Shown here: positions 23,355-39,958 of the stretch, piece by piece | Position numbering within the stretch: the stretch's first letter is position 1 | Layout: each line of letters begins with the position of its first letter | Virus record (IMG/VR): IMGVR_UViG_3300021964_000012 | Span: 62,001-126,000 of that record | Direction: 5' to 3' (one strand) | DNA length: 64,000 nucleotides | Translations under genes and position numbers: made by a program | The notes under the pieces: generated by a model | The model's input: the letters and a program-made list of their open reading frames with translations, nothing else | What the model was told of the DNA's origin: nothing | Database searches by the model: none

Positions 23355-24290
23355 CTAGGTGCCCCATGCGTTTCCGAAGAGGCTAATGTGTAGTCTGGGT
23401 GTAAACCTCCATCCTCTCTCCATGCAGAGTCTTGCAACTTCTTGGACGTTGAGAACATATTCTTCACTCCTGCCACCCAACGGCATAAGATATACAGGAC
23501 ATTCAATCCCTGCTTGCCTATACTCGTCAACAGCTCGACCAGCTTCATTGATATCAGTTTCATCAGCAACCACAAACTTGAGATACATGTCACTACCGAC
23601 CACAGACTGATAATCACGAGCCACTGCAGGCTTAATAGCAGTCTCCCAAGGTTCTCCTGAAACTGTGAGCTTTGGGGAACAACTCCAAGTAACCTTAAAC
23701 CTCTCTTGAGTGGAGAGATAATCGCCAAAATCTTCATGTAGCATTTGTGTTGTATTAGTTTCAAATGTAACATTTTTCAAGTCCTTCATTTTTGGATGTT
23801 CAAACAATTCAACATACAATCTTTGCCAAGCAAGTAAAGGCTCACCACCTGTCATTATCAAGTGTACGTCTTGCCCATTATCCATTGTCCATTTGCCTTC
23901 TGGCAGTAAACTGATTAAATGTTCAACTACTTCATCAACTGTACGTAGCATGTTGAAGTGTTTAAACTCAGGATAGATACTAGCATATGTATCGCAACCT
24001 GTGTGTATTATTGGCAAGTCGTTGAACTCTTTTGTATTTTTATGTATGCCTGTATCAAGCAAACCTTGTACTTCTTGATTGTGTATTATACCTTGTTTTT
24101 GTTTTTCATCTCGCATGGGTTCTGATCTATCCAAACCAAAGTTCATGCATCTAAAGTTACAACCAAATGTACGTAAGAACACACTAGGTACTCCTACAAA
24201 TTTACCTTCGCCTTGCACACTGTAAAAGGCTTCACTGTATCGTAATTTTGCTTGTTTGTTGGTGGCAACTGTTTGTTCTTCTACTACCAT
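23355..24290 (-). CDS. queE: 7-carboxy-7-deazaguanine synthase (radical SAM)
   Basis: EAFYSVQGEG, FLRTFGCNFRC-(long insert)-CDT, TGGEP, ETN, SPK, RLH. Confidence 0.9.
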   Translation of the reverse strand: MVVEEQTVATNKQAKLRYSEAFYSVQGEGKFVGVPSVFLRTFGCNFRCMNFGLDRSEPMRDEKQKQGIIHNQEVQGLLDTGIHKNTKEFNDLPIIHTGCDTYASIYPEFKHFNMLRTVDEVVEHLISLLPEGKWTMDNGQDVHLIMTGGEPLLAWQRLYVELFEHPKMKDLKNVTFETNTTQMLHEDFGDYLSTQERFKVTWSCSPKLTVSGEPWETAIKPAVARDYQSVVGSDMYLKFVVADETDINEAGRAVDEYRQAGIECPVYLMPLGGRSEEYVLNVQEVARLCMERGWRFTPRLHISLFGNAWGT

Positions 24291-24493
24291 ATTCCTAATG
24301 TCCTTCCGTTACCCATTATTATAGCACAACATGTAACAATATGCAAGACTATCCAAAAGGTTCGCATAGCAAGAGCAAGTCTGACATTTTGTTGTGTAAT
24401 AGGCAAAAACTCAGGCTTGTCATCATCAGTGATGCCAATTGGCATTCCAACTGTTCTTGCCCAGGTCCTAAGCCAACGTCGTTGTCCACTCAT
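24284..24493 (-). CDS. small membrane protein
   Basis: WLRTWARTVG...single C-terminal TM; coupled ORF. Confidence 0.6.
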   Translation of the reverse strand: MSGQRRWLRTWARTVGMPIGITDDDKPEFLPITQQNVRLALAMRTFWIVLHIVTCCAIIMGNGRTLGIW

Positions 24494-24714
24494 TTAGATT
24501 CAGTTACTTTCTGTAGTTGAAGTTCTTTGCCAACTATTTCACGCAGTTTTAATCCGTTACCCATTGGGTCCATGTTTTCATAACGTGTTAAACAATCACG
24601 TGCATTAATATCTTTCCAGATTTCCTTACGTCCATCTGGCCAAGATATTTCGTACCTACGTAAACTTTTGTCCCAGCTCTTAGGCGAGCCGTCTTTCATA
24701 TAGGTAACAGTCAT
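24490..24714 (-). CDS. hypothetical protein
   Basis: 74-aa ORF coupled on both sides. Confidence 0.6.
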   Translation of the reverse strand: MTVTYMKDGSPKSWDKSLRRYEISWPDGRKEIWKDINARDCLTRYENMDPMGNGLKLREIVGKELQLQKVTESK

Positions 24715-25304
24715 TACCGCATAACCTCTTCATTTGGATTCCAACGACTCCACCATTCTTCCCATGGAAAAACAATCCAACTTGGATCATCTACTTTGTT
24801 GATTTCTTCTGCGGCATAGCTAACTTTCAGAACTGCGTCGCTTGCACTGTTATCATATAATACTGCAAAACGTGTTGATTCATTCCATATAGTATTCCAA
24901 ACATAGAGTAAATTATCATCGATCTTTTTATTGATTGTGTTTTCCCAATCTTGTTTGATCCAATTAATAGTTGCACCTGAATCATTTATATCATCTACAA
25001 TTAGGACTTTCTTACGTTGCCCAACGTCCCATCTTGCACCACTGTGTCGACCGTCATTCATGCCAAATGCTATTTCTGCTAATTTCTCATTGCTTTCACA
25101 TGGTACATGTTTGCCATCACGTAATCTTACATCAAGTGTATACATAGTAACATCTAAATATTGACTTAACAAGTTGCTTAGTGTTAGTCCGCCTCTTGTG
25201 ATACCCACGATAAAGTCAGGCTTCCATGAATCTTTCTGCATTTGACGCAATATTTCTTGAGTTTGTCTTTGTACATCATGCCAGGTTACATAGACTTTTT
25301 TCAT
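24714..25304 (-). CDS. type I purine phosphoribosyltransferase (Gpt/Hpt-like)
   Basis: IVGITRGG, VLIVDDINDSGAT (PRPP-binding), WIVFPWE. Confidence 0.88.
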   Translation of the reverse strand: MKKVYVTWHDVQRQTQEILRQMQKDSWKPDFIVGITRGGLTLSNLLSQYLDVTMYTLDVRLRDGKHVPCESNEKLAEIAFGMNDGRHSGARWDVGQRKKVLIVDDINDSGATINWIKQDWENTINKKIDDNLLYVWNTIWNESTRFAVLYDNSASDAVLKVSYAAEEINKVDDPSWIVFPWEEWWSRWNPNEEVMR

Positions 25305-25317
25305 AGTATTAATCCTT

Positions 25318-26151
25318 TCAAGTGCTGACTTTATAGGTGGTTAGGAATCCTTTGGTATCTTGTTCTAATAACTTGTCATTATAATTTGCTTTGCCTTCTT
25401 GTACACTATCAAAGAATCCATTGTCTTGTCCAAGTCTTTTTCTAAGCCAATTCATTTTTAAAGTCCATTGCCATCTAAGATTGACTGTGTCTTTGTGTAG
25501 GAAATCACCTGGTTTGTCTGGATTTCCTTCGTGAGTTAGATCTCTTTCTTTATAGGTATCATCATTGTTATTGCCTGTAAGATCATGTCTATCGTGTAAG
25601 CATCGGCTTTTTAATTGTATTACTGCATCATTAGGGTAAGCCACTTGACTTATCCATGCATCAATATAAGGAAAAGGACTGCAGGTACCAAAGAATACAA
25701 CCCAGTCACGTGGTATGATTGGAAATATTGCATAAGGATGTCCATGATTATCTTGCATTCTTAGTACTGCAAATTGCCCATTATAACTGAGCACTTCTGT
25801 ATCCCATCCTTTACTTTCCATTCTGGCATCATCATTCCATGTAAGTAACCATCGACCTCGAGACTCAGTTGCCAATTGATTATCATATTCATTGAGCCTA
25901 GCATAACCTAATCTAGGCTGAACAAAACACTGAAAATCAACGTCTGCCTCTTCAAAATAAGGAACCATTGTGTTGTTTACATAATCAATCGTTTCTTTAT
26001 CGTCGTCGTCAACTGCTACTAAAAATTCTATACCACTAGGATCATCAGCAGTTTCTATACAACTTTTCATGCTTTCTAAAGCCAGTTCTGGACGGCCACG
26101 AGTTGCCATTTTCACACTGATATTTGTTGAAGGTTCTATATTAAATGGCAT
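25318..26151 (-). CDS. GT-A (GT2-like) glycosyltransferase
   Basis: ATRGRP, VDDDD, WNDD, HDRHDLTGNNND; paralog of 51602..52312. Confidence 0.7.
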   Translation of the reverse strand: MPFNIEPSTNISVKMATRGRPELALESMKSCIETADDPSGIEFLVAVDDDDKETIDYVNNTMVPYFEEADVDFQCFVQPRLGYARLNEYDNQLATESRGRWLLTWNDDARMESKGWDTEVLSYNGQFAVLRMQDNHGHPYAIFPIIPRDWVVFFGTCSPFPYIDAWISQVAYPNDAVIQLKSRCLHDRHDLTGNNNDDTYKERDLTHEGNPDKPGDFLHKDTVNLRWQWTLKMNWLRKRLGQDNGFFDSVQEGKANYNDKLLEQDTKGFLTTYKVST

Positions 26152-26738
26152 TATCTTTTCTCTACTATTTTATCAACCAATCCATAATCTAAGGCTTGTT
26201 CTGCACTCATAAATTTGTCACGATCCATGTCTCGATCAAAATCTTCGTAGGTTTTGCCTTTGGTGTTATGTTTTACATAAAGTTTTGTGAGTGTTTCTTT
26301 GATGTTTTGTATTTCTTTATAACGTATTTCAATGTCACTGGCTTGTCCGCTGGCGCCACCACTTGGTTGATGTATCATGTGTCTTGCATTAGGCAACATC
26401 AAACGTTTTCCTGGTGCACCTGCATTGGCTAAAAAACTACCCATTGAACAGGCCTGTCCCATCACAACAGTGGTTACATCTGGTTTGATGAATTGCATGG
26501 TATCGTATATGCTCATGCCAGCAGTGACTACGCCACCTGGTGAATTAATATAGAACAATATATCTTTGTCAGGATCTTCTGATTCTAAGAATAACATTTG
26601 TGCTACAATTAAATTTGCACTGTAGTCTTCAACCGTTCCATTAAGCATTACAATTCGATCTTTTAACAACCTACTGTAGATATCATATGCACGTTCACCT
26701 TTAGAGGTGGTTTCTACCACCATTGGTACCAAAGCCAT
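26151..26738 (-). CDS. clpP: ATP-dependent Clp protease proteolytic subunit
   Basis: [33 protein letters not shown] triad motifs. Start refined to MALVPMV. Confidence 0.96.
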
Positions 26739-27193
26739 TATGTTGTGATCCTTTTGTATATTGCACTGTTTGCACCATGTTCCATACACTCAACTGAATG
26801 TACCCAACATCTGCCATCTGTTTGTTCTTTAATTAGTTTATCTGCAAAATCATATGCATGTTTGGCAAACATCTCTGCACCAACACCATCAAGTATTGTT
26901 AGTTGTGCTAGTCCTGCATCTTCTAATGTGTGAAAGTAGTGAAGTTTGTCATCATTCTCATCAAGCACAACCTTGTGATCAAATGTATCTTCTAACCACT
27001 GTTTCAATGGCTTCAATCCACCAAAGTCCACTGCCCAGTTTTTATTGTCAAGTTTGCTACAAGCAAATACAAACTTGAATCCTAAACTGTAGCCATGTAA
27101 GAATCTACAATGAGAATGATCTGCATGCGGTTGTCTAAACACTGCACTAAGTCCAATGTTGTGTCCATAAGTTTTTGTACTATAGTATGCCAT
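26738..27193 (-). CDS. queD: 6-carboxytetrahydropterin synthase
   Basis: C-x-x-LHGYS, [21 protein letters not shown]. Confidence 0.9.
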
Positions 27194-27201
27194 ACGTTCT
27201 C

Positions 27202-27504: not shown

Positions 27505-27505
27505 A

Positions 27506-28273
27506 TTAGTAGTCCCATACTCGTGCATAATAGCCTTTGCCTGTGGTGTCACCACCTACGTTATCAACTGGTTCACCTTTGTATTCAACTTCTGTTATTA
27601 TGGTATCACCATTTGGTTGTGCTTCCACATAAATTTTCAACTTTGTTGGGTCAAATTTTGAACCATCATCAACATGCACAACACCGTCAAAGAACGATCC
27701 TTTTTCTGCACTCATACCATAAAACACATATGGACCAGGAACGGTACCGTCATCTAGTGGCAATGGTTCACCTTCATTGTCGCCTTCTTCTACAAATCCA
27801 TTTGGGTATAGTGCTTTGTCAAGATCAAATTCACCATCTTCTTTTTCTATATTGTTGTCAGTAATATACTTTGGAGTGTCTTCATTGTCAACTATATCGG
27901 CAATATGTTTTGAGCTATAGTCTTCTCCGTCTCGTTCTTCAATGTTTATCCAACTGTTGTCTATATCAACTCCATAGTTGTGTTCTAATTCACCAGGTGC
28001 TTCATACCATTCACTGTAGAAATCTTCTCCAGCATTGTATAGAAAGTTTGCTTCAGTCGGTAAGTCTGGATTAGTATCTGTAACATAGTCTTCTGGTGAA
28101 CCCATGTAGCTTTCTAATTCACTGTCACCCTGTTCATTCCAATATTCGAATGCTTCTTGACTGATACGTGCATAGACTGTTTCACCACCATAGCCACCAA
28201 TGCTTATGTGATAGTATCTGTCTGGACGTTTAATTGCTTCAATTAGTTCTTCATCAGTTGCCATAGTTGCCAC
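27506..28273 (-). CDS. acidic hypothetical protein
   Basis: IGGYGGE...SAEKGSFF...FDPTKL...GDTTGKG; highly acidic. Confidence 0.7.
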   Translation of the reverse strand: MATMATDEELIEAIKRPDRYYHISIGGYGGETVYARISQEAFEYWNEQGDSELESYMGSPEDYVTDTNPDLPTEANFLYNAGEDFYSEWYEAPGELEHNYGVDIDNSWINIEERDGEDYSSKHIADIVDNEDTPKYITDNNIEKEDGEFDLDKALYPNGFVEEGDNEGEPLPLDDGTVPGPYVFYGMSAEKGSFFDGVVHVDDGSKFDPTKLKIYVEAQPNGDTIITEVEYKGEPVDNVGGDTTGKGYYARVWDY

Positions 28274-28637
28274 TCCCTGGTATTACGTTGCGAACTCCGC
28301 CTGTGGGGTCTTTTGTATCGCCATCACGTCTAAAAATTAAATGCACATGAGGATACATCACAGTTTGACCTGCACTGGTACCTACGTTGATACCAACGTT
28401 AAAGCCTGTAATTTCGTTGTCTTTGCCTTCAACGTTTGCATTACCCATTTGCATTGCATAATTGAAACAACGAAGCAAGTTCTGCATGTTCGACTCACGA
28501 GGCACAACCAGTGTGTGCCCTGGCGTAACCGGAAAGCCATCATTGTAGACAACAAATTCTTTTGTTTCTAGTTGCACATCGGTCCAAGGGGCTCTACCCT
28601 CTTGCTTTGCCACTTCTAACGTATCTAAACTATGCAT
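28254..28637 (-). CDS. HIT-family nucleotide hydrolase
   Basis: DGFPVTPGHTLVVP, N-x-G-x-x-AGQTV-x-YPHVH, RRDGD. Confidence 0.9.
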   Translation of the reverse strand: MHSLDTLEVAKQEGRAPWTDVQLETKEFVVYNDGFPVTPGHTLVVPRESNMQNLLRCFNYAMQMGNANVEGKDNEITGFNVGINVGTSAGQTVMYPHVHLIFRRDGDTKDPTGGVRNVIPGSGNYGN

Positions 28638-28662
28638 CGCTTGCCTCGTTGTTAATACTGTT

Positions 28663-28690
28663 ATTATAGCAGTTTATGAGCAAATGTCAA
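28663..28690 (-). promoter_or_regulatory. sigma70-type promoter
   Basis: TTGACA-16 nt-TATAAT with TG. Confidence 0.7.
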
Positions 28691-29547: not shown

Positions 29548-29549
29548 TT

Positions 29550-30617: not shown

Positions 30618-30669
30618 TTTGTTTCCTTCTCGAGGGTGTTAAGGCAGGATCGACTCTGCCATGGTTGAT

Positions 30670-31356
30670 TTATCGTGGACTATATTCTTGTTGCAACTTG
30701 ATATTGTCCATGAACTCCTTTTTTGTGCCAGAGTCAGTTTTGAATGCACCTTTAAGTACAGTGGTCTGTGTAAGACTACTGTGTGCCATTATGCCTCTGT
30801 TTTCACAACAACCATGTGTTGCTTGTATGTAAACACCAACATCTTCACTGTCAGTTGCTCTCATTATTTCTCTGGCTATGTCCATTGCAAGTTCTTCCTG
30901 CAATGTACCTCTTCTTGCACACCATTGTGCAATTCTTGTGTATTTGCTTAATCCTATTAGATGATCTGCGGCTAGTATACCAATATAAGCAGTTCCAGTA
31001 ACTGGTTGATGATGATGCGAACACATGCTCTTCAATTCGCTACGAACCACCAACATACCATCATATCTATCTTCAAGATGATTGGGAAAACTGGTTGCGT
31101 TTGGCATAGGACTGTATCTGCCTGCCATCAATTCATTGATATACATCTTAGCTAAACGTTTACCTGTGCCATGTGAGTTTGGATCATTTTCTCTGTCAAT
31201 GATCAAACTGTCAAGCACACCATTGAACTTTTCAGTAAGTTCTTCTATCAATGCTTCTTTGTCGCCGTCATGCAGATAACCACTGATGTTGTCACCAGCC
31301 CAATATCTTTTTTTGGCTTTTTTAATTCTTTGTGTAATTATATTGGAAATTGTCAT
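30670..31356 (-). CDS. folE: GTP cyclohydrolase I
   Basis: SMCSHHHQP, GLSK..R, R..LQE, HGCCENRG. Confidence 0.95.
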   Translation of the reverse strand: MTISNIITQRIKKAKKRYWAGDNISGYLHDGDKEALIEELTEKFNGVLDSLIIDRENDPNSHGTGKRLAKMYINELMAGRYSPMPNATSFPNHLEDRYDGMLVVRSELKSMCSHHHQPVTGTAYIGILAADHLIGLSKYTRIAQWCARRGTLQEELAMDIAREIMRATDSEDVGVYIQATHGCCENRGIMAHSSLTQTTVLKGAFKTDSGTKKEFMDNIKLQQEYSPR

Positions 31357-31433: not shown

Positions 31434-32024
31434 TCAATCGATTATTTTTATCTTGGTCAAGTCAGGATAGTTAACCAGTTGAGATTGTTTGGTTTTCAGT
31501 TGATTATTTGCGAGCATGTACATTCCTTTCTCGCAATCTTCAATGCTGGGTTTATAATGATATCCAACACGAAAAGTTTTTTGATCTTGCCAGGGAGCTA
31601 TTGCTAGATCTCGACCATCATAGGCCATTTTTCTCAGTGTCTTCGCATCTCGTTCATTGTTAGTTAGAATAGCGCCACCATGTCCAATTTCAAGTCGTTT
31701 ACTGTGACCAAAACTTAAACATTGAAACTGACCTGCTCTATACATGTCACTGTCTAACCCTCTAGCACTATCCCATACATTTGTTAGTCCGATTCTATAT
31801 TCGTGTGTCCATTCAACTTTGTCATAGCGATAATCTATGTTGAGTTTGTGCATGGTCATTGGAATGCTTATGTAACTTCTGTATGGAAGATTTACTATGC
31901 TGACCTTTTGCATTCGCAAACAAAGTTCCACTGCATGAGTGCAACAGTCAGTAAGTACCACATGTGGTGCACCAGTATAATCACCGAGTGCCTTTTCAAA
32001 TTGTGCGAACTTTTCAAACCCCAC
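31434..32024 (-). CDS. short DegT/DnrJ/EryC1-family PLP aminotransferase
   Basis: FEKAL..Y.G, DCCTHA, WDSA, LSFGHSK (PLP Lys), GHGGAI, GR, GYHY; lacks the usual C-terminal domain. GTG start inferred. Confidence 0.75.
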   Translation of the reverse strand: MGFEKFAQFEKALGDYTGAPHVVLTDCCTHAVELCLRMQKVSIVNLPYRSYISIPMTMHKLNIDYRYDKVEWTHEYRIGLTNVWDSARGLDSDMYRAGQFQCLSFGHSKRLEIGHGGAILTNNERDAKTLRKMAYDGRDLAIAPWQDQKTFRVGYHYKPSIEDCEKGMYMLANNQLKTKQSQLVNYPDLTKIKIID

Positions 32025-32967
32025 AGTTATACCAATTCCATGCATGTTCTACAATGTCATCAACATGATATTCGTTTTGCCACTGGCATGTTTCATAGAA
32101 CTTTTTGTTACTTGCTACTAACGTATCTGGGTCACCTGGTCTGCCTGGACCTTCTACAACCGTACTAGGTTTACTTCCACTTACAGTGCAACACTTACGC
32201 AGTATCTCTAGATTACTTGCACCCATTCCTGTGCTTAAATTGTAAAATCCAGTACTTACTCTTGGTTCTGTGCAATAGAAGTGTGCTTTTGCAATATCAG
32301 ATACATGTACGTAGTCTCTTACACAGGTTCCATCTTCGGTTGCTAGGCCTGTGCCATTGAGTGTGAACTGTTTTTGTTCTTTAATTGCTTCCATTACTCT
32401 TGCGATAATGTGTGTGGCAGATTTTTCTTGTCCGTGTCTTCCTTTAGGATCTGCACCAGCAGCATTGAAATAACGCAATCCTACATAGTCTAGGTTATAT
32501 GCAACACCATATGCTTCAAGCATCTGTTCAACCATCAGTTTGCTTAGTCCATATGGTGATATTGGATTTTTTGGATCTTCTTCTGCTATTGGTGTCATCA
32601 TCGGATTACCATACACTGCGGCACTACTTGAAAAAACTATACGAGGATGCAGTTTCATACCAACAACATAATCTAGCATGCGTTTTGTAGCAACAAAGTT
32701 GTTTTCAAAATATCTGCTAGGATCTTTTATGCTTGGACCAACTAAACTACTACCAGCACAGTGTACTATAACATCTGTGTAGTGTAGTTGTCCGAGAGTT
32801 TGTTTGCTTTCAAAGTCGTCGTGTATGACATAATCCACAAAAGGTCCAAGTCTATCTGGAACAGGATTGCGATCAATAACAGTAACCTCCCATCCTTGTT
32901 CTTTAAAATATATAGCAGTTTGGCCACCAATGTAGCCTCCGCCACCAGTAATTGCTACTTGTTTCAT
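32014..32967 (-). CDS. galE: UDP-glucose 4-epimerase
   Basis: TGGGGYIG, FSSSAAVYG, PYGLSK, LRYFNAAGA, DGTCVRDYVHV, RPGDP. Confidence 0.92.
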   Translation of the reverse strand: MKQVAITGGGGYIGGQTAIYFKEQGWEVTVIDRNPVPDRLGPFVDYVIHDDFESKQTLGQLHYTDVIVHCAGSSLVGPSIKDPSRYFENNFVATKRMLDYVVGMKLHPRIVFSSSAAVYGNPMMTPIAEEDPKNPISPYGLSKLMVEQMLEAYGVAYNLDYVGLRYFNAAGADPKGRHGQEKSATHIIARVMEAIKEQKQFTLNGTGLATEDGTCVRDYVHVSDIAKAHFYCTEPRVSTGFYNLSTGMGASNLEILRKCCTVSGSKPSTVVEGPGRPGDPDTLVASNKKFYETCQWQNEYHVDDIVEHAWNWYNCGV

Positions 32968-33515
32968 GATAGGTTTGCTTTCCATAGTTTGTGTAAATAT
33001 TTTGCTTTGTCTTTGTTGATAGCAGATGTTAAGAAAAAATCAAGCCTATCTAGTACTTCATCTATGTCATCACTGAATAATTCATACACACTGATATTCA
33101 TAATATCTTCCATGTTGCTTCCAAAATAATTGTGCATCATATGCGGTTCATATAAAAATATTTGTTCATGATCAAAATAACCATCTAACTTTAGTTCTCC
33201 ATTACGTTTGTAAAGAATTGATCTGCATTCATATGTATCTGGTGATATGAGTATCCACTTTTTATTGTCTGTTTGGCGTATATCTTCTCTAATACTCATT
33301 ATTTCGCCAAAGTGGCCGTGTACTATATTGTTTTTATGATACTTTTCCTTTGTTAAGTTTGGTTCACCCTCAACTTCATGAACACCAATTTGCTTATTTT
33401 TTTTGTTTCTAGTATAAATTTGTTTATAGTAGTCAAAGTTATCTTCATTGAGATGAAGTATGTTCTTAAGATGGTTACCGCCGCCAAAAGGAACAAAGCA
33501 AATTATTATTTTCAT
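32964..33515 (-). CDS. hypothetical protein, sulfotransferase-like N-terminal loop
   Basis: FVPFGGGNHL resembles 34787..35392 (YIPGSAGNLL); both end with H-x-x-W / W-x-x-W. Confidence 0.45.
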   Translation of the reverse strand: MKIIICFVPFGGGNHLKNILHLNEDNFDYYKQIYTRNKKNKQIGVHEVEGEPNLTKEKYHKNNIVHGHFGEIMSIREDIRQTDNKKWILISPDTYECRSILYKRNGELKLDGYFDHEQIFLYEPHMMHNYFGSNMEDIMNISVYELFSDDIDEVLDRLDFFLTSAINKDKAKYLHKLWKANLS

Positions 33516-33544
33516 GAAAACAGTTCCTATTGTCAAGTGTCTTC

Positions 33545-34732
33545 TTAAATTTTTACAACTTGATACTTTGCACCAGCAACATGATCTCTATACCTGTTAC
33601 CTGTACGTAACCATTGTTCACCTTTGCCCTGCATGATGTCAACCACCCTATCAACAGTACCATCAGTATGATCGCTTATCAAGCCCATGTTGTGATGTGC
33701 TTCTTTTAGTAGGTTTCCTAGTTTAACTTCGACATCATCAATGCTCCAAGGCACATACAATCTGTTTGGATCGTTTGCAAATGTTTCTGGAAAACTTCTG
33801 TATGCTGGATACAGTACATTACAACCTAGTGCATCTGCTTCACTGACAGTGTTGCTTACCCAATCTTGTAAAGCACAGTTAAACAATACTCTACTATCAT
33901 TTAGTATTTTGTAGTATTCATGCTTTTGCAAGTTTTCGTGTATTTCTAGTATGCCACGTGCTTCAAGTTCTCTTGCACGAGTTATATATTTTTCATTGTT
34001 ACTACGCAATGGTCCACCTTGTAGTATTGCAAACGTTTGAGAACCTGGATGTTGTTCGCTATAACGTTCTACTAGATCCATAAAGAAGTCTGGTTGCTTC
34101 TCTTGATCAAATCTTGCACTAAAGCAAATCCTATTAGCACGTTCATGAAAAGGCTTTATCCGTTCGCCCAACCTTTCCTGAACTTCTGCTTTGCCAAATG
34201 CCAAGCCTGAGATATTGTATATAGGTGACTCCCAGCCAGCAATCTTCATGTGTGCTACCATTTCTTCATTGGTAGCCAAGACTGTGGCAAACTCACATAC
34301 CATCTTCTCATATAGGCCCATCCACTTGGACATTCCCCACACATGTACGAAATCATCTGGATCAATTGCTTGGGCAAGACAGCGTACATATACTCGGGGT
34401 CTTTGGGTACTTGGAATCTGATCCATAATATATGGCAGACTCTCTATACCCGGCTGAAACATATCTTCAAAGTAAATAACATCTTCTCCACCGCATTCAC
34501 CATTACGCATCATTTGCACTAGATTCATAATCTGGCTCATACCAAAATAACTGCGTCCATGTGCATCTAATACTTGTCCAACTGATATACTTTTTGAGTC
34601 ATCAATTGTTGTACCTGGAACATACACAACATCAAGTCCTCTACGATCAAACACACGTCGATTCCATTCAGTTAATTGTAATGTATATCGAGCTTCATAA
34701 GATTCAAGACCCATGTAGAATAGTTTACGCAT
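33545..34732 (-). CDS. GT-B (GT4-like) glycosyltransferase
   Basis: RFDQEKQP, LQDWVSNTVSEA..GC..LYP.YRSFPE (E-x7-E-like). Start refined to MRKLFYM with GGAG RBS. Confidence 0.75.
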   Translation of the reverse strand: MRKLFYMGLESYEARYTLQLTEWNRRVFDRRGLDVVYVPGTTIDDSKSISVGQVLDAHGRSYFGMSQIMNLVQMMRNGECGGEDVIYFEDMFQPGIESLPYIMDQIPSTQRPRVYVRCLAQAIDPDDFVHVWGMSKWMGLYEKMVCEFATVLATNEEMVAHMKIAGWESPIYNISGLAFGKAEVQERLGERIKPFHERANRICFSARFDQEKQPDFFMDLVERYSEQHPGSQTFAILQGGPLRSNNEKYITRARELEARGILEIHENLQKHEYYKILNDSRVLFNCALQDWVSNTVSEADALGCNVLYPAYRSFPETFANDPNRLYVPWSIDDVEVKLGNLLKEAHHNMGLISDHTDGTVDRVVDIMQGKGEQWLRTGNRYRDHVAGAKYQVVKI

Positions 34733-34757
34733 TTTTACTCCTTTGAAATATGTACTA

Positions 34758-34786
34758 ATAATAACAACCAATTAAATGGTTGTCAA
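34758..34786 (-). promoter_or_regulatory. sigma70-type promoter
   Basis: TTGACA-17 nt-TATTAT with TG. Confidence 0.65.
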
Positions 34787-35392: not shown

Positions 35393-35667
35393 TAGAAGTC
35401 AACATCTCTTCCGTTTATATTGTAAGTACCGTGTGTGAAACCTCTATCCATCTTTTCGATTTCGGTCATGTCGTCACTATCAATCCTGCGATTAGGATCT
35501 CGTTTCATTTGTGCTAGACGGTCTTTTGCATTGTCTTTGCCACACACAGAGCATACGCCTGATGCACCACCGCAACTGCCGCTTACACGACGGCCTCTTA
35601 GGAGGCCTATACTCATTGCCAATACTGTAATTAATAAGATGACCAAGCATATTAAAAATGTCTCCAT
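35392..35667 (-). CDS. NqrM-like (Na+-NQR maturation, DUF539) membrane protein
   Basis: TM helix ending LAMSIG, then R-x-x-GSCGG...CSVC. Confidence 0.65.
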   Translation of the reverse strand: METFLICLVILLITVLAMSIGLLRGRRVSGSCGGASGVCSVCGKDNAKDRLAQMKRDPNRRIDSDDMTEIEKMDRGFTHGTYNINGRDVDF

Positions 35668-36717
35668 TTAGTATTCGTAATGTATATTTCTATCGCCTTG
35701 TAATATTAACATAGGACGGTCGTAATTGCTATTGTTAATTGAACAATGTGAAAAATATTGTTGATTGAAAAATGCTCCATCATTGATTGGCACTAAGCCT
35801 GCTGGCCCTAGTTTATACTTGTTTTTGTCTGCTTCTTTTTCTTGCAGATTAAGTAAAAATATTACTGGACCTTTAGTATAATACATTGCTTCTTTTATGC
35901 CATATGGATCTTGAATATATGCATCATCAATATGTGGTTTAAAACTTGCGCCTGCTGGTAATGTTTGTAAATTTATATCTAACATACGAGTAAAACCAAT
36001 CTGTTCACATAATTTTCGTAGTTCTTTGTTTTGAATTTGATCAAGTTCTGTAAACGGTAAGTGTGCATGCTCAGACATTACCTTACGATGCAATATGCGT
36101 GTCTTTCCATCTTGTTTTCCAAACTGTGAAATATCTTTATCAATTACCAATTTACAGTCTAATTCTATATCATGTATAATTTTTTGTCTGTCAATGTTTG
36201 AAATCTTCTCTGGTGGAACTATATCATAAGGTTCAGCCAATGATCCTTTTCTCCACCACCCAGGACCATGCCCTGCTCTATAATAACTTCTGATGCGTTC
36301 TGGCCAGATTGGATCGATATCAATAGGCTTGTCAACTGTATGCAAATAAAGAGGAAATTTGTCTAACCCATAATCTCCGTTTCTAATATTCTGTTGCATA
36401 AATATTTCTAGATATCCAAATTCTGTATGTAACCATATACTATAATAACCTTCTGTCCATACTGCATTTGCAGGTTGAAACCTTTTTCCTGTGCTAGACT
36501 CTGTAAAAAACCCTGTATAAAAATAATGTCGAAGTGTTTCACCATTTATTTTCATGTCACTAAGCTCTATTTTTTCTCCGGTGTATTCTAGTATAAAATT
36601 ATACCAACCAGGAGGTATATCAAATGATTCGTGATTTGTAAACTGTATTACTTCGTCTTTTAGGTTTTTTAGATAATATTTTCCTAAAGGTTTATCAGCA
36701 AAAATTTCAATCTTCAT
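35668..36717 (-). CDS. two-domain protein with C-terminal cupin 2OG-Fe(II)-type oxygenase
   Basis: PHIDD...HCSIN...R in the C-terminal half. Confidence 0.6.
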   Translation of the reverse strand: MKIEIFADKPLGKYYLKNLKDEVIQFTNHESFDIPPGWYNFILEYTGEKIELSDMKINGETLRHYFYTGFFTESSTGKRFQPANAVWTEGYYSIWLHTEFGYLEIFMQQNIRNGDYGLDKFPLYLHTVDKPIDIDPIWPERIRSYYRAGHGPGWWRKGSLAEPYDIVPPEKISNIDRQKIIHDIELDCKLVIDKDISQFGKQDGKTRILHRKVMSEHAHLPFTELDQIQNKELRKLCEQIGFTRMLDINLQTLPAGASFKPHIDDAYIQDPYGIKEAMYYTKGPVIFLLNLQEKEADKNKYKLGPAGLVPINDGAFFNQQYFSHCSINNSNYDRPMLILQGDRNIHYEY

Positions 36718-36718
36718 A

Positions 36719-37162
36719 TTAGTAACTTACGCAACAACCATTTTCTCCATCTTCACTGACTTCAATGGTTACGGCCCTTCCTGGGTATTTATTAGCTATT
36801 TGCAAATACAAATCATCCGCTATCATCTCACAGGACTTGTAGTCCAGCTCAAGCACTCCAGTGTCACCGTGTCCTTCACTTCCGTCCGGTACCATATCAT
36901 ACAATCGTTGTAGCCAACGTTTGAATTGTATAAATTCAATTTCTCTGTCGTCATGGAATACTTCGATTTGCACCCTGAAATGGAAAATATGACGATGAGG
37001 ATAACCAAGAAACGATACATCATCCCAACCTCCTGTTGCTAGTTTTGGATCATCCAATGCCGCTGGATACTTGTGAATACCTTCACGTTTAAAGGTTACC
37101 CAAATCTGCCTGGAGGCTTTGTCTTTTGCATTTTCAACGGCTTCACGTTCTGCTTGTATCAT
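36719..37162 (-). CDS. QueD-like T-fold protein, probable CDG decarboxylase (DpdL-like)
   Basis: EGIHKYP, LGYPHRHIFHF, DREIEF, SCEMIA, VSEDGENG. A second QueD-fold protein lacking the QueD C-x-x-x-HGH/Y motif. Confidence 0.7.
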   Translation of the reverse strand: MIQAEREAVENAKDKASRQIWVTFKREGIHKYPAALDDPKLATGGWDDVSFLGYPHRHIFHFRVQIEVFHDDREIEFIQFKRWLQRLYDMVPDGSEGHGDTGVLELDYKSCEMIADDLYLQIANKYPGRAVTIEVSEDGENGCCVSY

Positions 37163-37947
37163 ATTAACTCCTTGTAAAGTAAAGGATACCTTTTTTCTAT
37201 GGTATCTAATACGTTATCGCATATCATTTTGTGTCCTTCAGGACTAGGATGCCCAGGATGTAATCCTTTGTCATCATCAATATGATTGTACACTAAATCA
37301 CTCCATGGGTCAAGTACCAATTGCCACTCGTCAAATTTTGTTTTAAAAAAATTAAAAGCCGCAACGTATTCATGTGTTGAATAGTCATCAATATCCGCAC
37401 CTGTACTTCTTACCCAAGCATTTGGATCCTTGTCTATGTCTTGATATGCAGTTGCAAGATCATACTTAGCATTAGGTGAAGACCAACTGTTAAAAAATAT
37501 TACAGGACAGTTGAAATAGTTAGTAGCAAGTTCGTATATCTGCCATATTTGATTGAACATTTGGTATATGTATTCAACTTCGTCGTATACATCGTCTACA
37601 AAAAAAGCAAGCAATTTATTTTCATTAGTGAAATCACGATGAAATTTTACATCATTTTTCTTAGCAAATCTATCATTGATTATACCATGTCCTATATTCC
37701 AACTAGAGCCCATCTTACTTGGTAAATGCCAACGTGAATGTACAGTCAATCCTATTAAGATAAGTTTTGGTTTAGAATTTGTATGATATAATTTATAAAG
37801 GTTACTTAGAATTCTACTATTACTTCCACAACCAGCAGCCTGATTTATAACCTTACATTTAACACGTGATTGCAATACACAAGGCCAACTGTAATCAGGA
37901 TCTATATTACTACGTTGTGACCAAGAATCACCATTGACATAAATCAT
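37159..37947 (-). CDS. SGNH/GDSL-like hydrolase or acyltransferase
   Basis: MIYVNGDSW, NQAAGCGSN, T..SR, GHPSPEGH. Confidence 0.7.
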   Translation of the reverse strand: MIYVNGDSWSQRSNIDPDYSWPCVLQSRVKCKVINQAAGCGSNSRILSNLYKLYHTNSKPKLILIGLTVHSRWHLPSKMGSSWNIGHGIINDRFAKKNDVKFHRDFTNENKLLAFFVDDVYDEVEYIYQMFNQIWQIYELATNYFNCPVIFFNSWSSPNAKYDLATAYQDIDKDPNAWVRSTGADIDDYSTHEYVAAFNFFKTKFDEWQLVLDPWSDLVYNHIDDDKGLHPGHPSPEGHKMICDNVLDTIEKRYPLLYKELI

Positions 37948-38450
37948 TTTATAATCTCATCTTTAGAATAATCTGTCCAAGGAGTAAACTTTCGTCTATC
38001 CATAAGTTTGTGTAAGCTGTGTGTCCATACACCAGGATTTGTTGCATCAAAGTCGATGTCATCAATCTTTAACATTGTATTGTAGTTCCAGTGTTTGATA
38101 AAAGGGATGCCAACTCTCAACTGTGGAATAAAAGTATTGTATTCGCAGTAACCTTCTTCATGGAATGCTTCAAACTGCGATACAGGTATATCCAGTGTAC
38201 ACCATACATTGTCTCTAAGAAAAGGCATGATCATAAACGACCATTCATAATGTTCATCATCATCTTTGGGATCATATGTATGATTGGCACCAAAGAATAT
38301 GTGCTTACACCCATGCTTTTCATATGCTTCTTTGACTGCAACTACATCTTGTATACCAACAACAAACAGTGTCTTCATACCAAACGCAGGAGTGTGTTCA
38401 ACTTCAGTGCCTATAAACCATTGTACGTTTTCGTGATCAGGACGTTCCAT
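37944..38450 (-). CDS. unknown protein immediately after dpdA
   Basis: FIGTEVEHTPA.G.KTLFVVG, HIFFGANH, TLD, KIDD.DF.ATNPGVW. Start refined to MERPDH. Confidence 0.75.
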   Translation of the reverse strand: MERPDHENVQWFIGTEVEHTPAFGMKTLFVVGIQDVVAVKEAYEKHGCKHIFFGANHTYDPKDDDEHYEWSFMIMPFLRDNVWCTLDIPVSQFEAFHEEGYCEYNTFIPQLRVGIPFIKHWNYNTMLKIDDIDFDATNPGVWTHSLHKLMDRRKFTPWTDYSKDEIIK

Positions 38451-38469
38451 TGTTTGCCTTTTTCTGTTT

Positions 38470-38498
38470 ATTATACAACAACTTGTACTGTATGTCAA
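38470..38498 (-). promoter_or_regulatory. consensus sigma70 promoter
   Basis: TTGACA-17 nt-TATAAT. Confidence 0.75.
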
Positions 38499-39958
38499 TC
38501 AAATAGTGCATTAAACTGACTTGCACTGTTTACTATCTTCTTGCCAGTAAAACCTCTTGTACCTTTAATACTATCCCAAAACTTACTGTTGTCTTCGATA
38601 ATTTGCATGCTTTTGTTATAATCTCGTGCTTCAAATACTCTTTCAACAACATCACGGAACAACACACGTTCAAATGTTTCGTGTACTAGCATTCCAGGAA
38701 GGATACCTTCATCATATCTGACATTAGCATCTTGTACTGCTCTTATGTGTTGCCATACATTGTGTCCCATTAGCAGTGCATAACTGAAACTATCCCAACT
38801 TGTCTTACCTTCTTTACCAATCTTATTTAGGTCGCCGGGTGCATAGTAACAAATATCTCCAATAGTTAGTCTTGAGCTTATCGGTGAATCTTCAAATTTT
38901 TCATGTATACCATCACGTAGCACTACGTCACGAAAACTGTCTGTGCCATGTGCATATTTCTTATCATCAGCAGTGGCTTCCATCATGTAACTCCACTTGC
39001 CTCTATCTTCAGTACGCAGGTTGGTATACACTTGTCCGTTAGCAGTTGCAAGGAATGGCGACGCACAATCAAAACTAATAGTAAAGTTTGCATTCGCATG
39101 ACGACGTACACTACGTTGTATATCAGTTAACAAACATGCCCACTCTAGTTTGCTAGTGCCTAAAAAGTGCATCCAATCATGGTGTCCTTTTTCTAGCAGT
39201 CCTTCATGTATAAGTGTAACCAAACGTTTCAATACCAAGTGTACATCACACATGTTCTGTCCACCCATACCCCAACCATCAAATGGCCTGTCATACTTGT
39301 CTGAACAAAACTTTTTCATAGTATCGTACCATTGATCCGCTTCAGTGTGATTTGAACCTTGTAGCACGTTTAGTATCTTCAGCTCGCCACTTCTACTCTT
39401 CATCCAAAATTCATTGTTAAACAAGGTAGCATCAACTGCATCTTGATAACTTTTTATTCCACATGCTTCACTTGCTTCTTTATCCAAGTAAGTCCATGTA
39501 GGAATATCCATGGTCATACCATGTGTTGCTATGCCCATTTGCCATGCAATAACCTGTTCACGTTTCTTCTCACAGGCTTTATCTTTAGGATCAGCCCATG
39601 CTCCTGGCCACACACCTTTGGCAATTTGGAATCCACCTGAGTCAGCAAGCATGATAGTATCTGCTTCTCTATTACGCACCATATCTTCTTTTGGCACTGT
39701 GATACTTAGATCCATATTGGCATGTCCAGCTGAATACAAACTATACTTGTAAGGAAACAAACTTTCTTTGCTGTTCAGCCAATTCATAGCCTCCATATTA
39801 GGAATGCCCTTGGGCAACCTATTACCAATAATCTTGTTTTTATCACCTGCAGGAAAACGTTCCTTACCAATGTAACCAGCATAAAAACTGCTGATTGCAG
39901 GCAAGAATACTGCATAGTCTTTTTGTTTTAGTGTTAGATTATCTTGTTTAGTTTCCAT
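38495..39958 (-). CDS. TGT-fold guanine transglycosylase (DpdA-like)
   Basis: LADSGGFQ, MDIP, VLQG, GWGMGG, HFLG, ISFDCAS: ordered TGT catalytic motifs; no C-x-C-x-x-C zinc site. Confidence 0.8.
   Translation of the reverse strand: METKQDNLTLKQKDYAVFLPAISSFYAGYIGKERFPAGDKNKIIGNRLPKGIPNMEAMNWLNSKESLFPYKYSLYSAGHANMDLSITVPKEDMVRNREADTIMLADSGGFQIAKGVWPGAWADPKDKACEKKREQVIAWQMGIATHGMTMDIPTWTYLDKEASEACGIKSYQDAVDATLFNNEFWMKSRSGELKILNVLQGSNHTEADQWYDTMKKFCSDKYDRPFDGWGMGGQNMCDVHLVLKRLVTLIHEGLLEKGHHDWMHFLGTSKLEWACLLTDIQRSVRRHANANFTISFDCASPFLATANGQVYTNLRTEDRGKWSYMMEATADDKKYAHGTDSFRDVVLRDGIHEKFEDSPISSRLTIGDICYYAPGDLNKIGKEGKTSWDSFSYALLMGHNVWQHIRAVQDANVRYDEGILPGMLVHETFERVLFRDVVERVFEARDYNKSMQIIEDNSKFWDSIKGTRGFTGKKIVNSASQFNALFD

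What the first reader, a model, noticed from the sequence alone, without database searches (positions are those of the whole stretch)
23355..39958. 7-deazaguanine DNA-modification pathway co-linear with a glycosyltransferase, GalE and an amino-sugar aminotransferase: candidate glycosylated deazaguanine
Seen: downstream of the polymerase and clamp, and ignoring inserted genes, the order is TGT/DpdA-like (38495), unknown (37944), QueD-like T-fold (36719), GT-B (33545), GalE (32014), DegT-like (31434), FolE (30670), HIT, QueD (26738), PRTase, QueE (23355). Known: FolE-QueD-QueE make 7-carboxy-7-deazaguanine (CDG); phage DpdA enzymes exchange guanine in DNA; a QueD paralog (DpdL) is proposed to decarboxylate CDG to 7-deazaguanine. 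No QueC, QueF or ArcS occurs in the window. Inference: the GT, with GalE and DegT supplying its NDP-sugar, sits inside this run, shares an early promoter with galE/degT, and may sugar-decorate the inserted base (on the CDG carboxylate or at free C7 of DG). I know of no glycosylated deazaguanine in DNA.
Basis: partly seen in the sequence, partly recalled or inferred. Interest (0 to 1): 0.9.

Follow-up and report, generated by a model that had tools for sequence, protein, structure and literature searches.

The report
Deazaguanine DNA-modification cluster with dedicated glycosyltransferase
A 328-kb estuarine jumbo phage carries the genes that replace guanine in DNA by 7-deazaguanine, and a sugar-transferring enzyme is tied to them in many unrelated phages, which predicts (no chemistry done) a sugar-bearing purine not yet reported in DNA.

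Summary
On the minus strand of 23355-39958 lie FolE, QueD and QueE (they make CDG), a DpdL with its exact signature motif, and a very divergent TGT/DpdA-like enzyme. The same block holds a GT4-type GT-B glycosyltransferase, GalE and a 203-aa mini-DegT. The complete genome has no QueC, QueF, ArcS, ThyA-type or other GT1-type gene.

The GT-deazaguanine link is not chance:
- All 47 related viral loci with enough flank carry u184, DpdL, GT and GalE. GT is the best-conserved gene of the block.
- GT homologues at only 30-46% identity sit beside DpdL in 7 of 7 independent contexts.
- In six cultured lineages (PA5oct group, ACP17, X1/BUDD, BCSR5, Phosso, BUCT-ZZ01) a family member abuts dpdL or dpdA.
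- Six other DpdL lineages, including phiST with plain dDG, lack it entirely.

Best reading: DpdL-derived 7-deazaguanine is glycosylated, before or after insertion into DNA. The chemistry is untested, and I found no paper describing it. Details to correct: the DegT-like gene is truncated and dispensable, and ClpP and the GT2 lie between QueD and the PRTase.

The parts
38495..39958 (-). TGT/DpdA-like base-exchange enzyme (487 aa), very divergent
   Evidence: It carries the DSGGFQ and FDCASP motifs. Foldseek's best matches are tRNA-guanine transglycosylases. hhalign gives 99% probability against the DpdA-like proteins of X1, BCSR5, BUCT-ZZ01 and ACP17. It has no Pfam or PADLOC hit. The gene is present in 80 of 80 related loci.
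37944..38450 (-). u184, conserved protein of unknown function between the TGT-like gene and DpdL
   Evidence: Present in 47 of 47 loci with enough flank. A homologue lies between GT and DpdL in an unrelated lineage, L086. No family hit.
36719..37162 (-). DpdL (QueD paralogue, proposed CDG decarboxylase)
   Evidence: It carries the LxxxHRHxF signature, which is found in 62 of 62 relatives. It matches phrog_17812 at E 1e-32. Homologues occur in phiST, ACP17, PA5oct and others.
33545..34735 (-). GT4-like GT-B glycosyltransferase, the core of the finding
   Evidence: AF2 pLDDT is 95.6. Nearest solved folds are BshA, MshA, SPS and PimA. The donor site R207, K212 and D290-x7-E298 is conserved. The gene is present in 47 of 47 relatives and is the best-conserved gene of the block, at median 75% identity.
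34758..34786 (-). sigma-70-like promoter directly upstream of GT
   Evidence: TTGACA-17-TATTAT with an extended TG, 11 of 12 matches. This is a consensus match only.
32014..32985 (-). GalE, UDP-glucose 4-epimerase
   Evidence: TIGR01179 scores 260.7 bits against a cut-off of 262.3. The best PDB matches are all GalE. Present in 47 of 47 relatives.
31434..32045 (-). mini DegT-like PLP domain (203 aa)
   Evidence: PF01041 at E 4e-13, partial match. It keeps Asp92 and Lys116 but lacks about 40 N-terminal residues, about 47 internal residues and the C-terminal domain. Present in 32 of 42 relatives at the same length.
30670..31356 (-). FolE, GTP cyclohydrolase I
   Evidence: PF01227 at E 5.5e-39.
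28254..28637 (-). HIT-family (HinT-like) protein, recurrent in the block
   Evidence: PF01230 at E 4e-10 and NF045834. It recurs between FolE and QueD in relatives.
26738..27193 (-). QueD, CPH4 synthase
   Evidence: PF01242 at E 1e-13 and TIGR03367. Its motif is CxxxHGY, as in 20 of 20 relatives.
25318..26151 (-). GT2-type (GT-A) glycosyltransferase, second GT of the block
   Evidence: phrog_14945 'glycosyltransferase' at E 6e-9. ESM Atlas score 0.99, sharing 225 of 256 features with viral PF00535 clusters. It follows QueD in relatives.
24714..25304 (-). xanthine/guanine phosphoribosyltransferase-like enzyme
   Evidence: PF00156 at E 2e-13, NF006613 and phrog_8995. A PRTase also lies inside the BUCT-ZZ01 and PA5oct clusters.
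23355..24290 (-). QueE, CDG synthase (radical SAM)
   Evidence: phrog_2076 at E 6.5e-50.
40608..45072 (-). context: DNA polymerase (42361-45072), u341, and a clamp-like u249 (40608-41357)
   Evidence: These genes are syntenic in 77-80 of 80 loci. The u249 homologue in Phosso is annotated as a sliding clamp.

Best explanation
This is a QueC-less, DpdL-type 7-deazaguanine DNA-modification module that has gained a glycosylation branch.

Proposed steps:
1. FolE, QueD and QueE turn GTP into 7-carboxy-7-deazaguanine (CDG). This follows from the known families.
2. DpdL removes the carboxyl group to give 7-deazaguanine (DG). This role is proposed in the literature and inferred here.
3. The divergent TGT/DpdA-like enzyme swaps guanine in phage DNA for the deazapurine. 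This is inferred from fold, motifs and context.
4. The dedicated GT4-type glycosyltransferase then transfers a hexose or N-acetylhexosamine to the deazaguanine. The donor would be a UDP-sugar that GalE epimerises. This step is inferred. The site is most plausibly the free, electron-rich C7 in the major groove. Transfer could occur on DNA after insertion or on the free base before it.
5. The GT2-type enzyme may add a second sugar.
6. The XGPRT-like enzyme may recycle the guanine released from DNA back towards GTP.

The predicted product is a glycosyl-2'-deoxy-7-deazaguanosine in virion DNA. A sugar there would shield the DNA from restriction enzymes and from host glycosylases that excise plain dDG.
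For: Pathway genes and gaps: FolE, QueD, QueE and DpdL are present, and the whole genome lacks QueC, QueF and ArcS.

The TGT-like enzyme belongs to the right superfamily: fold and catalytic motifs fit TGT/DpdA. Its PA5oct homologue lies with DpdL and QueE. PA5oct DNA has an unidentified modified G (PMC12191111).

The GT looks catalytically competent: the model is confident (pLDDT 95.6) and GT4-like. The pyrophosphate-binding Arg and Lys and the [D/E]-x7-E motif are kept in all seven lineages examined.

The GT is tied to the deazaguanine genes:
- 47 of 47 relatives carry it, a median of 281 bp from DpdL.
- 7 of 7 distant homologues lie next to DpdL.
- Six cultured lineages have GT abutting dpdL or dpdA. 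In ACP17 and PA5oct the dpdA stop overlaps the GT start.
- The T4-like cyanophage BUCT-ZZ01 packs QueE, PRT, QueD, FolE, a second GT, DpdA, DpdL and GT into one operon. Its GT is 67% identical to the window's.
- The family is absent from cellular genomes except for misbinned phage contigs.

The GT is not simply part of making dDG: six DpdL lineages, including phiST with proven plain dDG, have no family member anywhere in their genomes (PMC10516641).

No other acceptor is evident: there is no ThyA-type gene and no other GT1-type gene in the genome.

A selective reason exists: host Dag glycosylases attack dDG-containing phages (bioRxiv 10.1101/2025.10.29.685425).
Against: - There is no chemical evidence. 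No nucleoside mass, no enzyme assay and no raw-signal sequencing data were available.
- DG has no hydroxyl group, so the transfer would have to be a C- or N-glycosylation. No GT4 enzyme is known to do that (my knowledge).
- The closest solved folds (BshA, MshA, sucrose-phosphate synthase, SenB, LmbT) use small-molecule acceptors, so the acceptor may not be DNA. The family's median pI of 5.8 adds little, because the DNA-acting TGT-like protein is acidic too (pI 6.2).
- DpdL's decarboxylase activity has never been shown in vitro (PMC10516641).
- A distant GT branch (the PhiXhv group) occurs without DpdL.
Confidence: 0.5

Rival explanations
1. The GT belongs to the deazaguanine pathway but acts only on a free base or precursor, for example as a transient carrier, for solubilisation or for self-protection. 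The DNA then ends up with plain dDG, or another non-glycosylated derivative.
For: The nearest structural relatives are small-molecule GT4 enzymes. Expressing ACP17 dpdA plus dpdL in E. coli without the gene that lies between them gave no dDG (PMC10516641; that gene is a GT-family member). This would fit a GT needed upstream of insertion.
Against: phiST and five other DpdL lineages make do without any family member. A GalE is conserved in 47 of 47 relatives, and a second GT is present in the window and in BUCT-ZZ01. A dedicated sugar supply of that kind suits a stoichiometric end product better than a catalytic intermediate.
Confidence: 0.2
2. GT, GalE, mini-DegT and the GT2 glycosylate something other than a nucleic acid, such as a virion protein or host envelope glycans. 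They sit here only because they share early expression with replication genes.
For: Phage GT4 and GT2 enzymes with GalE are common in surface-glycan contexts (my knowledge). The PhiXhv outgroup GT lies with GlmS and a deacetylase rather than with dpd genes.
Against: GT lies within about 1.5 kb of DpdL in every context sampled, across unrelated phage lineages and different DpdA types. The family is small and found only in phage contexts. Family-specific N-terminal acceptor-side residues are conserved only in the dpd-linked members.
Confidence: 0.1
3. The TGT-like enzyme and the GT act on tRNA rather than DNA. They would make a glycosylated deazaguanosine in phage or host tRNA, by analogy with galactosyl- and mannosyl-queuosine.
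For: tRNA is the ancestral substrate of the TGT superfamily. Glycosylated queuosine exists in eukaryotic tRNA (my knowledge).
Against: PA5oct, which has the same TGT-like, GT and DpdL trio, has restriction-resistant DNA. It is also targeted by nucleases that sense modified G in DNA. DpdL-type phages have dDG in DNA. The genes lie in the replication module, next to the polymerase and clamp.
Confidence: 0.07
4. The GT decorates a different DNA base, such as a hydroxymethyl- or hydroxy-pyrimidine, as in T-even phages or RB69.
For: All known DNA sugar modifications are on pyrimidines or on the J base (PMC13326640, and my knowledge).
Against: No thymidylate-synthase-family match was found in the complete genome (control genomes matched). 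No TET/JBP match was found either, but that model matched no control genome, so its absence is unverified. The association is with DpdL specifically.
Confidence: 0.03

Closest known systems
DpdL-type 7-deazaguanine (dDG) systems of Cellulophaga phage phiST and relatives (PMC10516641)
   Same: Both have FolE, QueD and QueE plus DpdL with the LxxxHRHxF motif, a TGT-superfamily transglycosylase, and no QueC. In both, the genes lie next to the replicative polymerase, with an unknown gene between the transglycosylase and DpdL.
   Different: phiST has no glycosyltransferase of this family anywhere in its genome, and it has no GalE, DegT-like or GT2-type gene in the 14-kb region I read around its cluster. 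Its DpdA3 is not detectably related to the window's 487-aa enzyme (hhalign probability 2%). Its product is plain dDG.
Pseudomonas jumbo phage PA5oct (Wroclawvirus) and Acidovorax phage ACP17 deazaguanine clusters
   Same: The core trio is the same: a transglycosylase, a GT-family member and DpdL, with QueE alongside. PA5oct also shares the polymerase, u249 and TGT-like synteny. PA5oct DNA carries an unidentified modified G.
   Different: Their GTs are shorter (342-353 aa). They match the family profile at E 1e-43 (ACP17) and 2e-41 (PA5oct), and a direct tblastn of the window GT did not find them at E 1e-3. They use the canonical E-x7-E motif. No GalE, DegT or GT2 lies nearby. The published analysis I read of ACP17's dpd genes does not mention a glycosyltransferase (PMC10516641).
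Phage DNA glucosyl- and arabinosyltransferase systems (T4 alpha- and beta-GT on 5hmC; RB69 and DLP3 arabinosyl-5-hydroxycytosine, PMC13326640)
   Same: The logic is the same: a non-canonical base is made first and is then decorated from an NDP-sugar. In RB69 and DLP3 the phage also encodes its own sugar-nucleotide enzymes.
   Different: In those systems the acceptor is a pyrimidine hydroxyl made by a ThyA homologue, which this genome lacks. Here the predicted acceptor is a purine analogue with no hydroxyl. The GT resembles DNA alpha-GT only at the generic GT-B level (rank 41, TM about 0.5).
GT4 retaining glycosyltransferases BshA and MshA
   Same: They are the best structural matches (E 1e-13, TM 0.6-0.67). 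The GT-B fold, the Arg/Lys pyrophosphate site and the EX7E-type motif are shared.
   Different: Sequence identity is only 11-16%. The N-terminal acceptor domain carries its own invariant set (E10, R15-Y16-T17, Q67, D90, D127, E142). The genomic context is entirely different.

Membership tests
TGT/DpdA superfamily (base-exchanging transglycosylases) | TIM-barrel TGT fold | tested here: met
   The AF2 model (pTM 0.81) has nine TGT chains as its only Foldseek matches at E <= 0.001, though with modest TM scores of 0.4-0.5.
TGT/DpdA superfamily (base-exchanging transglycosylases) | Catalytic aspartates in the DSGGFQ-type and FDC(V/A)xP-type motifs | tested here: met
   D106 in DSGGFQ and D297 in FDCASP are invariant in 16 family members. 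They align with DSGG and DS/DC in the phage DpdA-like proteins. Equating them with TGT Asp102 and Asp280 rests on my knowledge of Z. mobilis TGT.
TGT/DpdA superfamily (base-exchanging transglycosylases) | Match to curated models (Pfam PF01702, PADLOC DpdA) | tested here: not met
   No hit at E <= 0.01 in Pfam, PHROGs, PADLOC or NCBIfam. PF01702 is absent from the six-frame genome search. The protein is therefore a very divergent, unnamed branch. It is not bDpdA, and it was not shown to be DpdA3.
TGT/DpdA superfamily (base-exchanging transglycosylases) | Exchange of guanine in DNA for a 7-deazaguanine | not testable with these tools
   Support is indirect only: PA5oct carries a homologue and has a modified G in its DNA.
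DpdL (QueD-paralogue, proposed CDG decarboxylase) | LxxxHRHxF in place of QueD's CxxxHGH | tested here: met
   The motif LGYPHRHIF is at residues 52-60. It is present in 62 of 62 relatives and in phiST, ACP17, X1, Phosso and BUCT-ZZ01.
DpdL (QueD-paralogue, proposed CDG decarboxylase) | Sequence homology to phiST and ACP17 DpdL | tested here: met
   tblastn gives 52% identity to ACP17 (E 3e-38) and 33% to phiST (E 8e-8).
DpdL (QueD-paralogue, proposed CDG decarboxylase) | Co-encoded with FolE, QueD, QueE and a DpdA, with no QueC | tested here: met
DpdL (QueD-paralogue, proposed CDG decarboxylase) | CDG decarboxylase activity | not testable with these tools
   The activity has not been demonstrated in the literature either.
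GT4-type retaining GT-B glycosyltransferases | Two-Rossmann-domain GT-B fold | tested here: met
   pLDDT 95.6. There are 419 PDB matches at E <= 0.001, and the top-ranked ones listed are GT-B glycosyltransferases, mostly GT4-type.
GT4-type retaining GT-B glycosyltransferases | Pfam Glycos_transf_1 above the gathering score | tested here: inconclusive
   The protein scan gives 24.8 bits against a cut-off of 26.4. The genome scan gives 27 bits, over the cut-off. Relatives carry PF00534.
GT4-type retaining GT-B glycosyltransferases | EX7E motif and Arg/Lys donor-phosphate ligands | tested here: met
   R207, K212 and D290-x7-E298 are conserved, with E-x7-E in X1, BCSR5, ACP17, PA5oct and Phosso. 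The functional assignment of these residues comes from my knowledge of GT4 enzymes.
Known DNA glycosyltransferases (T4 AGT and BGT and relatives) | Specific structural or sequence kinship beyond the generic GT-B fold | tested here: not met
   Cyanophage DNA alpha-GT appears only at rank 41 (E 3e-8, TM 0.51-0.54, 7% identity). None appears in the PDB top 50.
GalE (UDP-glucose 4-epimerase) | Equivalog-level model match | tested here: inconclusive
   TIGR01179 scores 260.7 bits against a cut-off of 262.3, just below it. The best 30 or so PDB sequence matches are all GalE (E down to 4e-65), and 4,6-dehydratase models score far lower.
DegT/DnrJ/EryC1 sugar aminotransferases | Full fold-type-I architecture (about 360-400 aa with a C-terminal domain) | tested here: not met
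   The protein is only 203 aa. Two short segments align, and the N-terminus, an internal stretch of about 47 aa and the C-terminal domain are missing. The PLP-binding Lys116 and Asp92 are retained.

The most novel reading that the evidence does not exclude
Virion DNA of this abundant aquatic jumbo-phage group carries 7-deazaguanine with a sugar, possibly two, attached by a carbon-carbon bond at C7. The same would hold for the cultured phages PA5oct, ACP17, X1, BCSR5, Phosso and BUCT-ZZ01. It would be the first glycosylated purine analogue in DNA and the first C-glycosidic base hypermodification. It would also make the GT the first GT4-type enzyme known to act as a C-glycosyltransferase on a nucleobase. 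It could also explain why dpdA plus dpdL alone failed to reconstitute the ACP17 modification.
Probability: 0.33. Interest if true: 0.92.

Novelty: new variant of a known kind. Interest (0 to 1): 0.82.

Why it matters
Every sugar-bearing DNA base known so far is a pyrimidine (or base J). All eight known 7-deazaguanine DNA modifications have small C7 groups.

A glycosylated deazaguanine would open a new chemical class of DNA hypermodification. It would also define a new enzyme activity, and possibly a tool for labelling 7-deaza-dG in DNA.

It could give a reason why dDG phages escape the deazaguanine-specific glycosylases and END-type nucleases that were described recently.

The prediction can be tested at once, because six cultured phage lineages carry the gene. 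The gene family is also very common in marine, estuarine and freshwater viromes, with more than 8000 clusters at 90% identity.

Tried and rejected
- Megablast of 10 kb against 50,697 phage records found nothing.
- Pfam, PHROG, PADLOC and NCBIfam scans, and a PDB profile search, all failed on the TGT-like protein. Only structure prediction and profile-profile comparison placed it.
- u184 stayed unexplained. The ESM Atlas returned only weak outer-membrane-like look-alikes, which I treat as noise.
- I checked whether 'GalE' might be a 4,6-dehydratase feeding the DegT-like protein. This was rejected: dTDP-glucose dehydratase models score 102 bits against 261 for GalE.
- The 590-aa GT fusion protein P0146 is not a GalE fusion. 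Its extra N-terminal 186 aa match nothing in the window.
I repeated it with 11 sequences.
- The full-text search for 'DpdL' was swamped by unrelated acronyms.
- Sequencing runs are held only as contigs, so no base-calling signal at G could be examined. RNA-library contigs cover GT, DpdL and the TGT-like gene, but DNA carry-over cannot be excluded.
- The isoelectric point does not tell DNA-binding from non-DNA-binding proteins here.

Full report
**Where the window lies**

The window is bases 62001-126000 of a 328,292-bp viral genome with direct terminal repeats, judged complete. Near-identical sequence occurs in many estuarine and marine metagenomes from 2018 to 2025. All genes in the region are on the minus strand.

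**Checking the observation**

Family scans confirm these genes:
- FolE at 30670-31356.
- QueD at 26738-27193.
- A HIT protein at 28254-28637.
- A xanthine/guanine-type phosphoribosyltransferase at 24714-25304.
- A GalE-type epimerase at 32014-32985.
- A partial DegT/DnrJ match at 31434-32045.
- A weak Glycos_transf_1 match at 33545-34771.
- QueE at 23355-24290. It has no Pfam hit but matches phrog_2076 at E 6.5e-50.

The 487-aa protein at 38495-39958:
- It contains DSGGFQ and FDCASP.
- It belongs to a family of more than 8000 clusters of about 507-aa hypothetical proteins.
- Its AlphaFold model (pTM 0.81) has tRNA-guanine transglycosylases as its only Foldseek matches at E <= 0.001 in the PDB.
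- Its profile aligns with the DpdA-like proteins of phages X1, BCSR5, BUCT-ZZ01 and ACP17 and two metagenomic phages, at 99% probability and E 2e-18.
- It is not detectably related to phiST DpdA3.

The 147-aa protein at 36719-37162:
- It carries LGYPHRHIF, the exact LxxxHRHxF signature by which DpdL was told apart from QueD.
- It is 52% identical to ACP17 DpdL.

- ClpP (26151-26789) and a second glycosyltransferase lie between QueD and the PRTase. That glycosyltransferase, at 25318-26151, is of the GT2/GT-A type (phrog_14945; Atlas score 0.99).
- The DegT-like protein has only 203 residues. It keeps the PLP lysine and aspartate but lacks the C-terminal domain and two other segments.

Six-frame searches of the whole genome found no QueC, QueF, ArcS C1 domain, PF01702 or thymidylate-synthase-family match. 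No TET/JBP match was found either, but that model matched no control genome, so its absence is unverified. The only GT1-type match is the one under study.

**Is the arrangement more than chance?**

I fetched 80 related viral loci through the TGT-like protein and mapped the window's proteins on them.
- The order recurs throughout: polymerase, u341, clamp-like u249, TGT-like, u184, DpdL, GT, GalE, mini-DegT, FolE, HIT, QueD, (ClpP), GT2, PRTase.
- All 47 loci with at least 6 kb downstream of the TGT-like gene carry u184, DpdL, GT and GalE. The mini-DegT is present in 32 of 42.
- Among relatives whose TGT-like protein is under 75% identical, GT is the best-conserved gene. Its median identity is 75%, against 73% for the polymerase and 66% for the TGT-like protein.

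**Does the glycosyltransferase travel with deazaguanine genes outside this phage group?**

The family is small and discrete. An exhaustive HMMER search of 1.84 billion cluster representatives gave only 824 matches.

I looked up seven representatives at 30-46% identity.
- In all seven independent contexts a DpdL homologue lies within about 1.5 kb.
- Where the contig is long enough, PTPS, GTP cyclohydrolase I and radical-SAM genes and a DpdA-like gene are there too.

A profile of the family finds members in six cultured lineages:
- BUCT-ZZ01: 480 bits, 67% identity.
- X1/BUDD and BCSR5: about 190 bits.
- ACP17: E 1e-43.
- The PA5oct group: E 2e-41.
- Phosso: E 1e-43.

Their arrangements are telling.
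- In ACP17 the order is dpdA, GT, dpdL, queE, with overlapping or abutting stop and start codons.
- In PA5oct it is TGT-like, GT, DpdL.
- In X1 it is GT, DpdA, DpdL, QueE.
- In Phosso it is DpdL, GT, FolE.
- In the T4-like cyanophage BUCT-ZZ01, one operon reads QueE, PRTase, QueD, FolE, a second GT4-like GT, DpdA, DpdL, GT.

These phages are unrelated in size and taxonomy. They also use at least two different DpdA types, so the association has been kept or assembled repeatedly.

tblastn with the ACP17 and X1 GTs finds 18 phage records holding a family member, and all are among the 28 DpdL-positive records.

A scan of one genome from each of 185,579 prokaryote species found only seven loci, all MAG contigs. 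Five of the seven show the same phage synteny, one short contig has DpdL beside GT, and one shows only part of GT.

Conversely, six DpdL lineages have no family member anywhere in their genomes. These are phiST-like, RHph_I1_18, Ahp1, Bakedbeans, D479 and MA9V-3. The positive controls matched in the same search.

One distant branch is an exception. The PhiXhv, Ep026 and Ep032 phages have a GT at 24.6% identity and 86 bits. It lacks the family's N-terminal conserved residues and lies beside GlmS and an LmbE-like deacetylase, with no DpdL detected.

**What kind of enzyme is it?**

The AlphaFold model is very confident (pLDDT 95.6) and has a GT-B fold.
- The nearest solved and Swiss-Prot structures are retaining GT4 enzymes with small acceptors: BshA, MshA, sucrose-phosphate synthase, PimA and GlgM. 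The S- and Se-glycosyltransferases LmbT and SenB also appear.
- Known DNA alpha-glucosyltransferases appear only as generic GT-B matches.
- The best viral matches are a 370-aa unnamed protein, the same length as the BCSR5 GT, and the ACP17 protein, at TM 0.74-0.84.
- The donor-side residues R207, K212 and [D/E]290-x7-E298 are conserved in all seven lineages compared. So is a family-specific acceptor-side set: E10, R15-Y16-T17, Q67, D90, D127 and E142.
- The enzyme therefore looks catalytically competent, with a specialised acceptor site rich in acidic and aromatic residues.

**Mechanism**

Shown or well founded:
- The genes for CDG synthesis are present.
- A DpdL and a TGT-superfamily enzyme with both catalytic aspartate motifs are present.
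- The genome has no route to preQ0.
- A competent GT4-type enzyme is genetically locked to DpdL.
- A GalE is locked to that GT in this phage group.

From the literature:
- DpdL phages such as phiST and VP1 carry dDG in their DNA.
- PA5oct has an unidentified modified G.

Inferred:
- The GT's acceptor is the DpdL product, 7-deazaguanine. It could act before or after the TGT-like enzyme places the base in DNA.
- The donor is a UDP-hexose or UDP-HexNAc balanced by GalE.
- The GT2-type enzyme may extend the sugar.
- The PRTase may salvage the released guanine.

Because DG has no hydroxyl, the bond would be a C-glycoside (at C7 or C8) or an N-glycoside. That is unprecedented for this enzyme class, and it is the main reason my confidence stays near one half.

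The failure of ACP17 dpdA plus dpdL to give dDG in E. coli takes on new interest, because the gene lying between them is a member of this GT family. The same experiment also failed for phiST, which has no GT.

**Rival explanations**

I weighed four rivals:
- The GT acts only on a free intermediate.
- The sugar genes serve a non-nucleic-acid target.
- The system acts on tRNA.
- The acceptor is another DNA base.

Each is detailed in its own section. The third and fourth are weak, given PA5oct's DNA phenotype and the lack of a pyrimidine-hydroxylating enzyme.

**Expression**

- A near-consensus sigma-70-like promoter ends 23 nt upstream of the GT start codon. Perfect 12-of-12 sites precede u184 and HIT. 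The overall count of such sites is no higher than in shuffled sequence.
- Contigs from three marine and salt-marsh RNA libraries cover GT, DpdL and the TGT-like gene. They skip the strain-specific inserts. DNA carry-over cannot be excluded.

**Novelty**

Full-text searches found no report of a glycosylated deazaguanine in DNA. The paper that defined DpdL never mentions a glycosyltransferase. The finding is a new variant of a known kind of system. It is widespread in nature and can be tested directly in cultured phages.

Noticed in passing
window 25318-26151 (-): A second glycosyltransferase, of the GT2/GT-A type, lies between ClpP and the PRTase and follows QueD in relatives. BUCT-ZZ01 likewise has two GTs in its cluster.
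   Followed up: partly
window 21703-22848 (-); L053:12519-13601; L073:11777-12919: A radical-SAM/SPASM protein lies just downstream of QueE in the window. In two relatives its homologue is inserted between u184 and DpdL. It may therefore belong to the same functional neighbourhood.
   Followed up: no
window 29550-30617 and 28687-29547 (-): A Bmp/PnrA-like nucleoside-binding lipoprotein (PF02608, E 3e-55) and a 2OG-Fe(II) oxygenase sit between FolE and HIT. They are present in only 4 and 3 of the 80 related loci, including L008, L011 and L076. A nucleoside-binding lipoprotein is an unusual phage cargo.
   Followed up: no
window 31434-32045 (-): The DegT-like protein is a conserved 203-aa 'mini' version. 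It keeps the PLP Lys and Asp but lacks the C-terminal domain. It is conserved at this length in 32 of 42 relatives, so it is not a pseudogene fragment. Its function is unclear.
   Followed up: partly
window 38470-38498 and 28663-28690 (-): Two perfect sigma-70 consensus sites (TTGACA, 16-17 nt spacer, TATAAT) lie immediately upstream of u184 and of the HIT gene. The first lies inside the 3' end of the TGT-like gene.
   Followed up: no
window 34752-35396 and 35664-36715: Metagenome and metatranscriptome contigs join across these stretches. Relatives in nature therefore lack u201 and u349, which is presence/absence polymorphism of inserted genes inside the cluster.
   Followed up: partly
window 26738-27193 (-): QueD reads CxxxHGY instead of the canonical CxxxHGH. 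The same variant is found in 20 of 20 relatives and in BUCT-ZZ01 and ACP17 QueD.
   Followed up: partly
window 26151-26789 (-): A full-length ClpP protease (PF00574, E 1e-79) overlaps the 3' end of QueD. In some relatives (L012, L018-L020) the ClpP homologue lies upstream of the polymerase instead.
   Followed up: no
L111:6747-9981 (Xanthomonas phage PhiXhv-15): The nearest outgroup of the GT family sits in a GlmS, LmbE-like deacetylase, GT arrangement that recalls bacillithiol/mycothiol-type chemistry. The phage has a lone QueD-like gene 88 kb away. This may be a different, uncharacterised sugar modification.
   Followed up: partly
L081:5605-10831 (PA5oct); L056:3500-7551: The DNA polymerase gene is split in PA5oct, where the intervening gene is annotated as a homing endonuclease, and in one metagenomic relative by an insert of about 1.4 kb. 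It is uninterrupted in the window.
   Followed up: no
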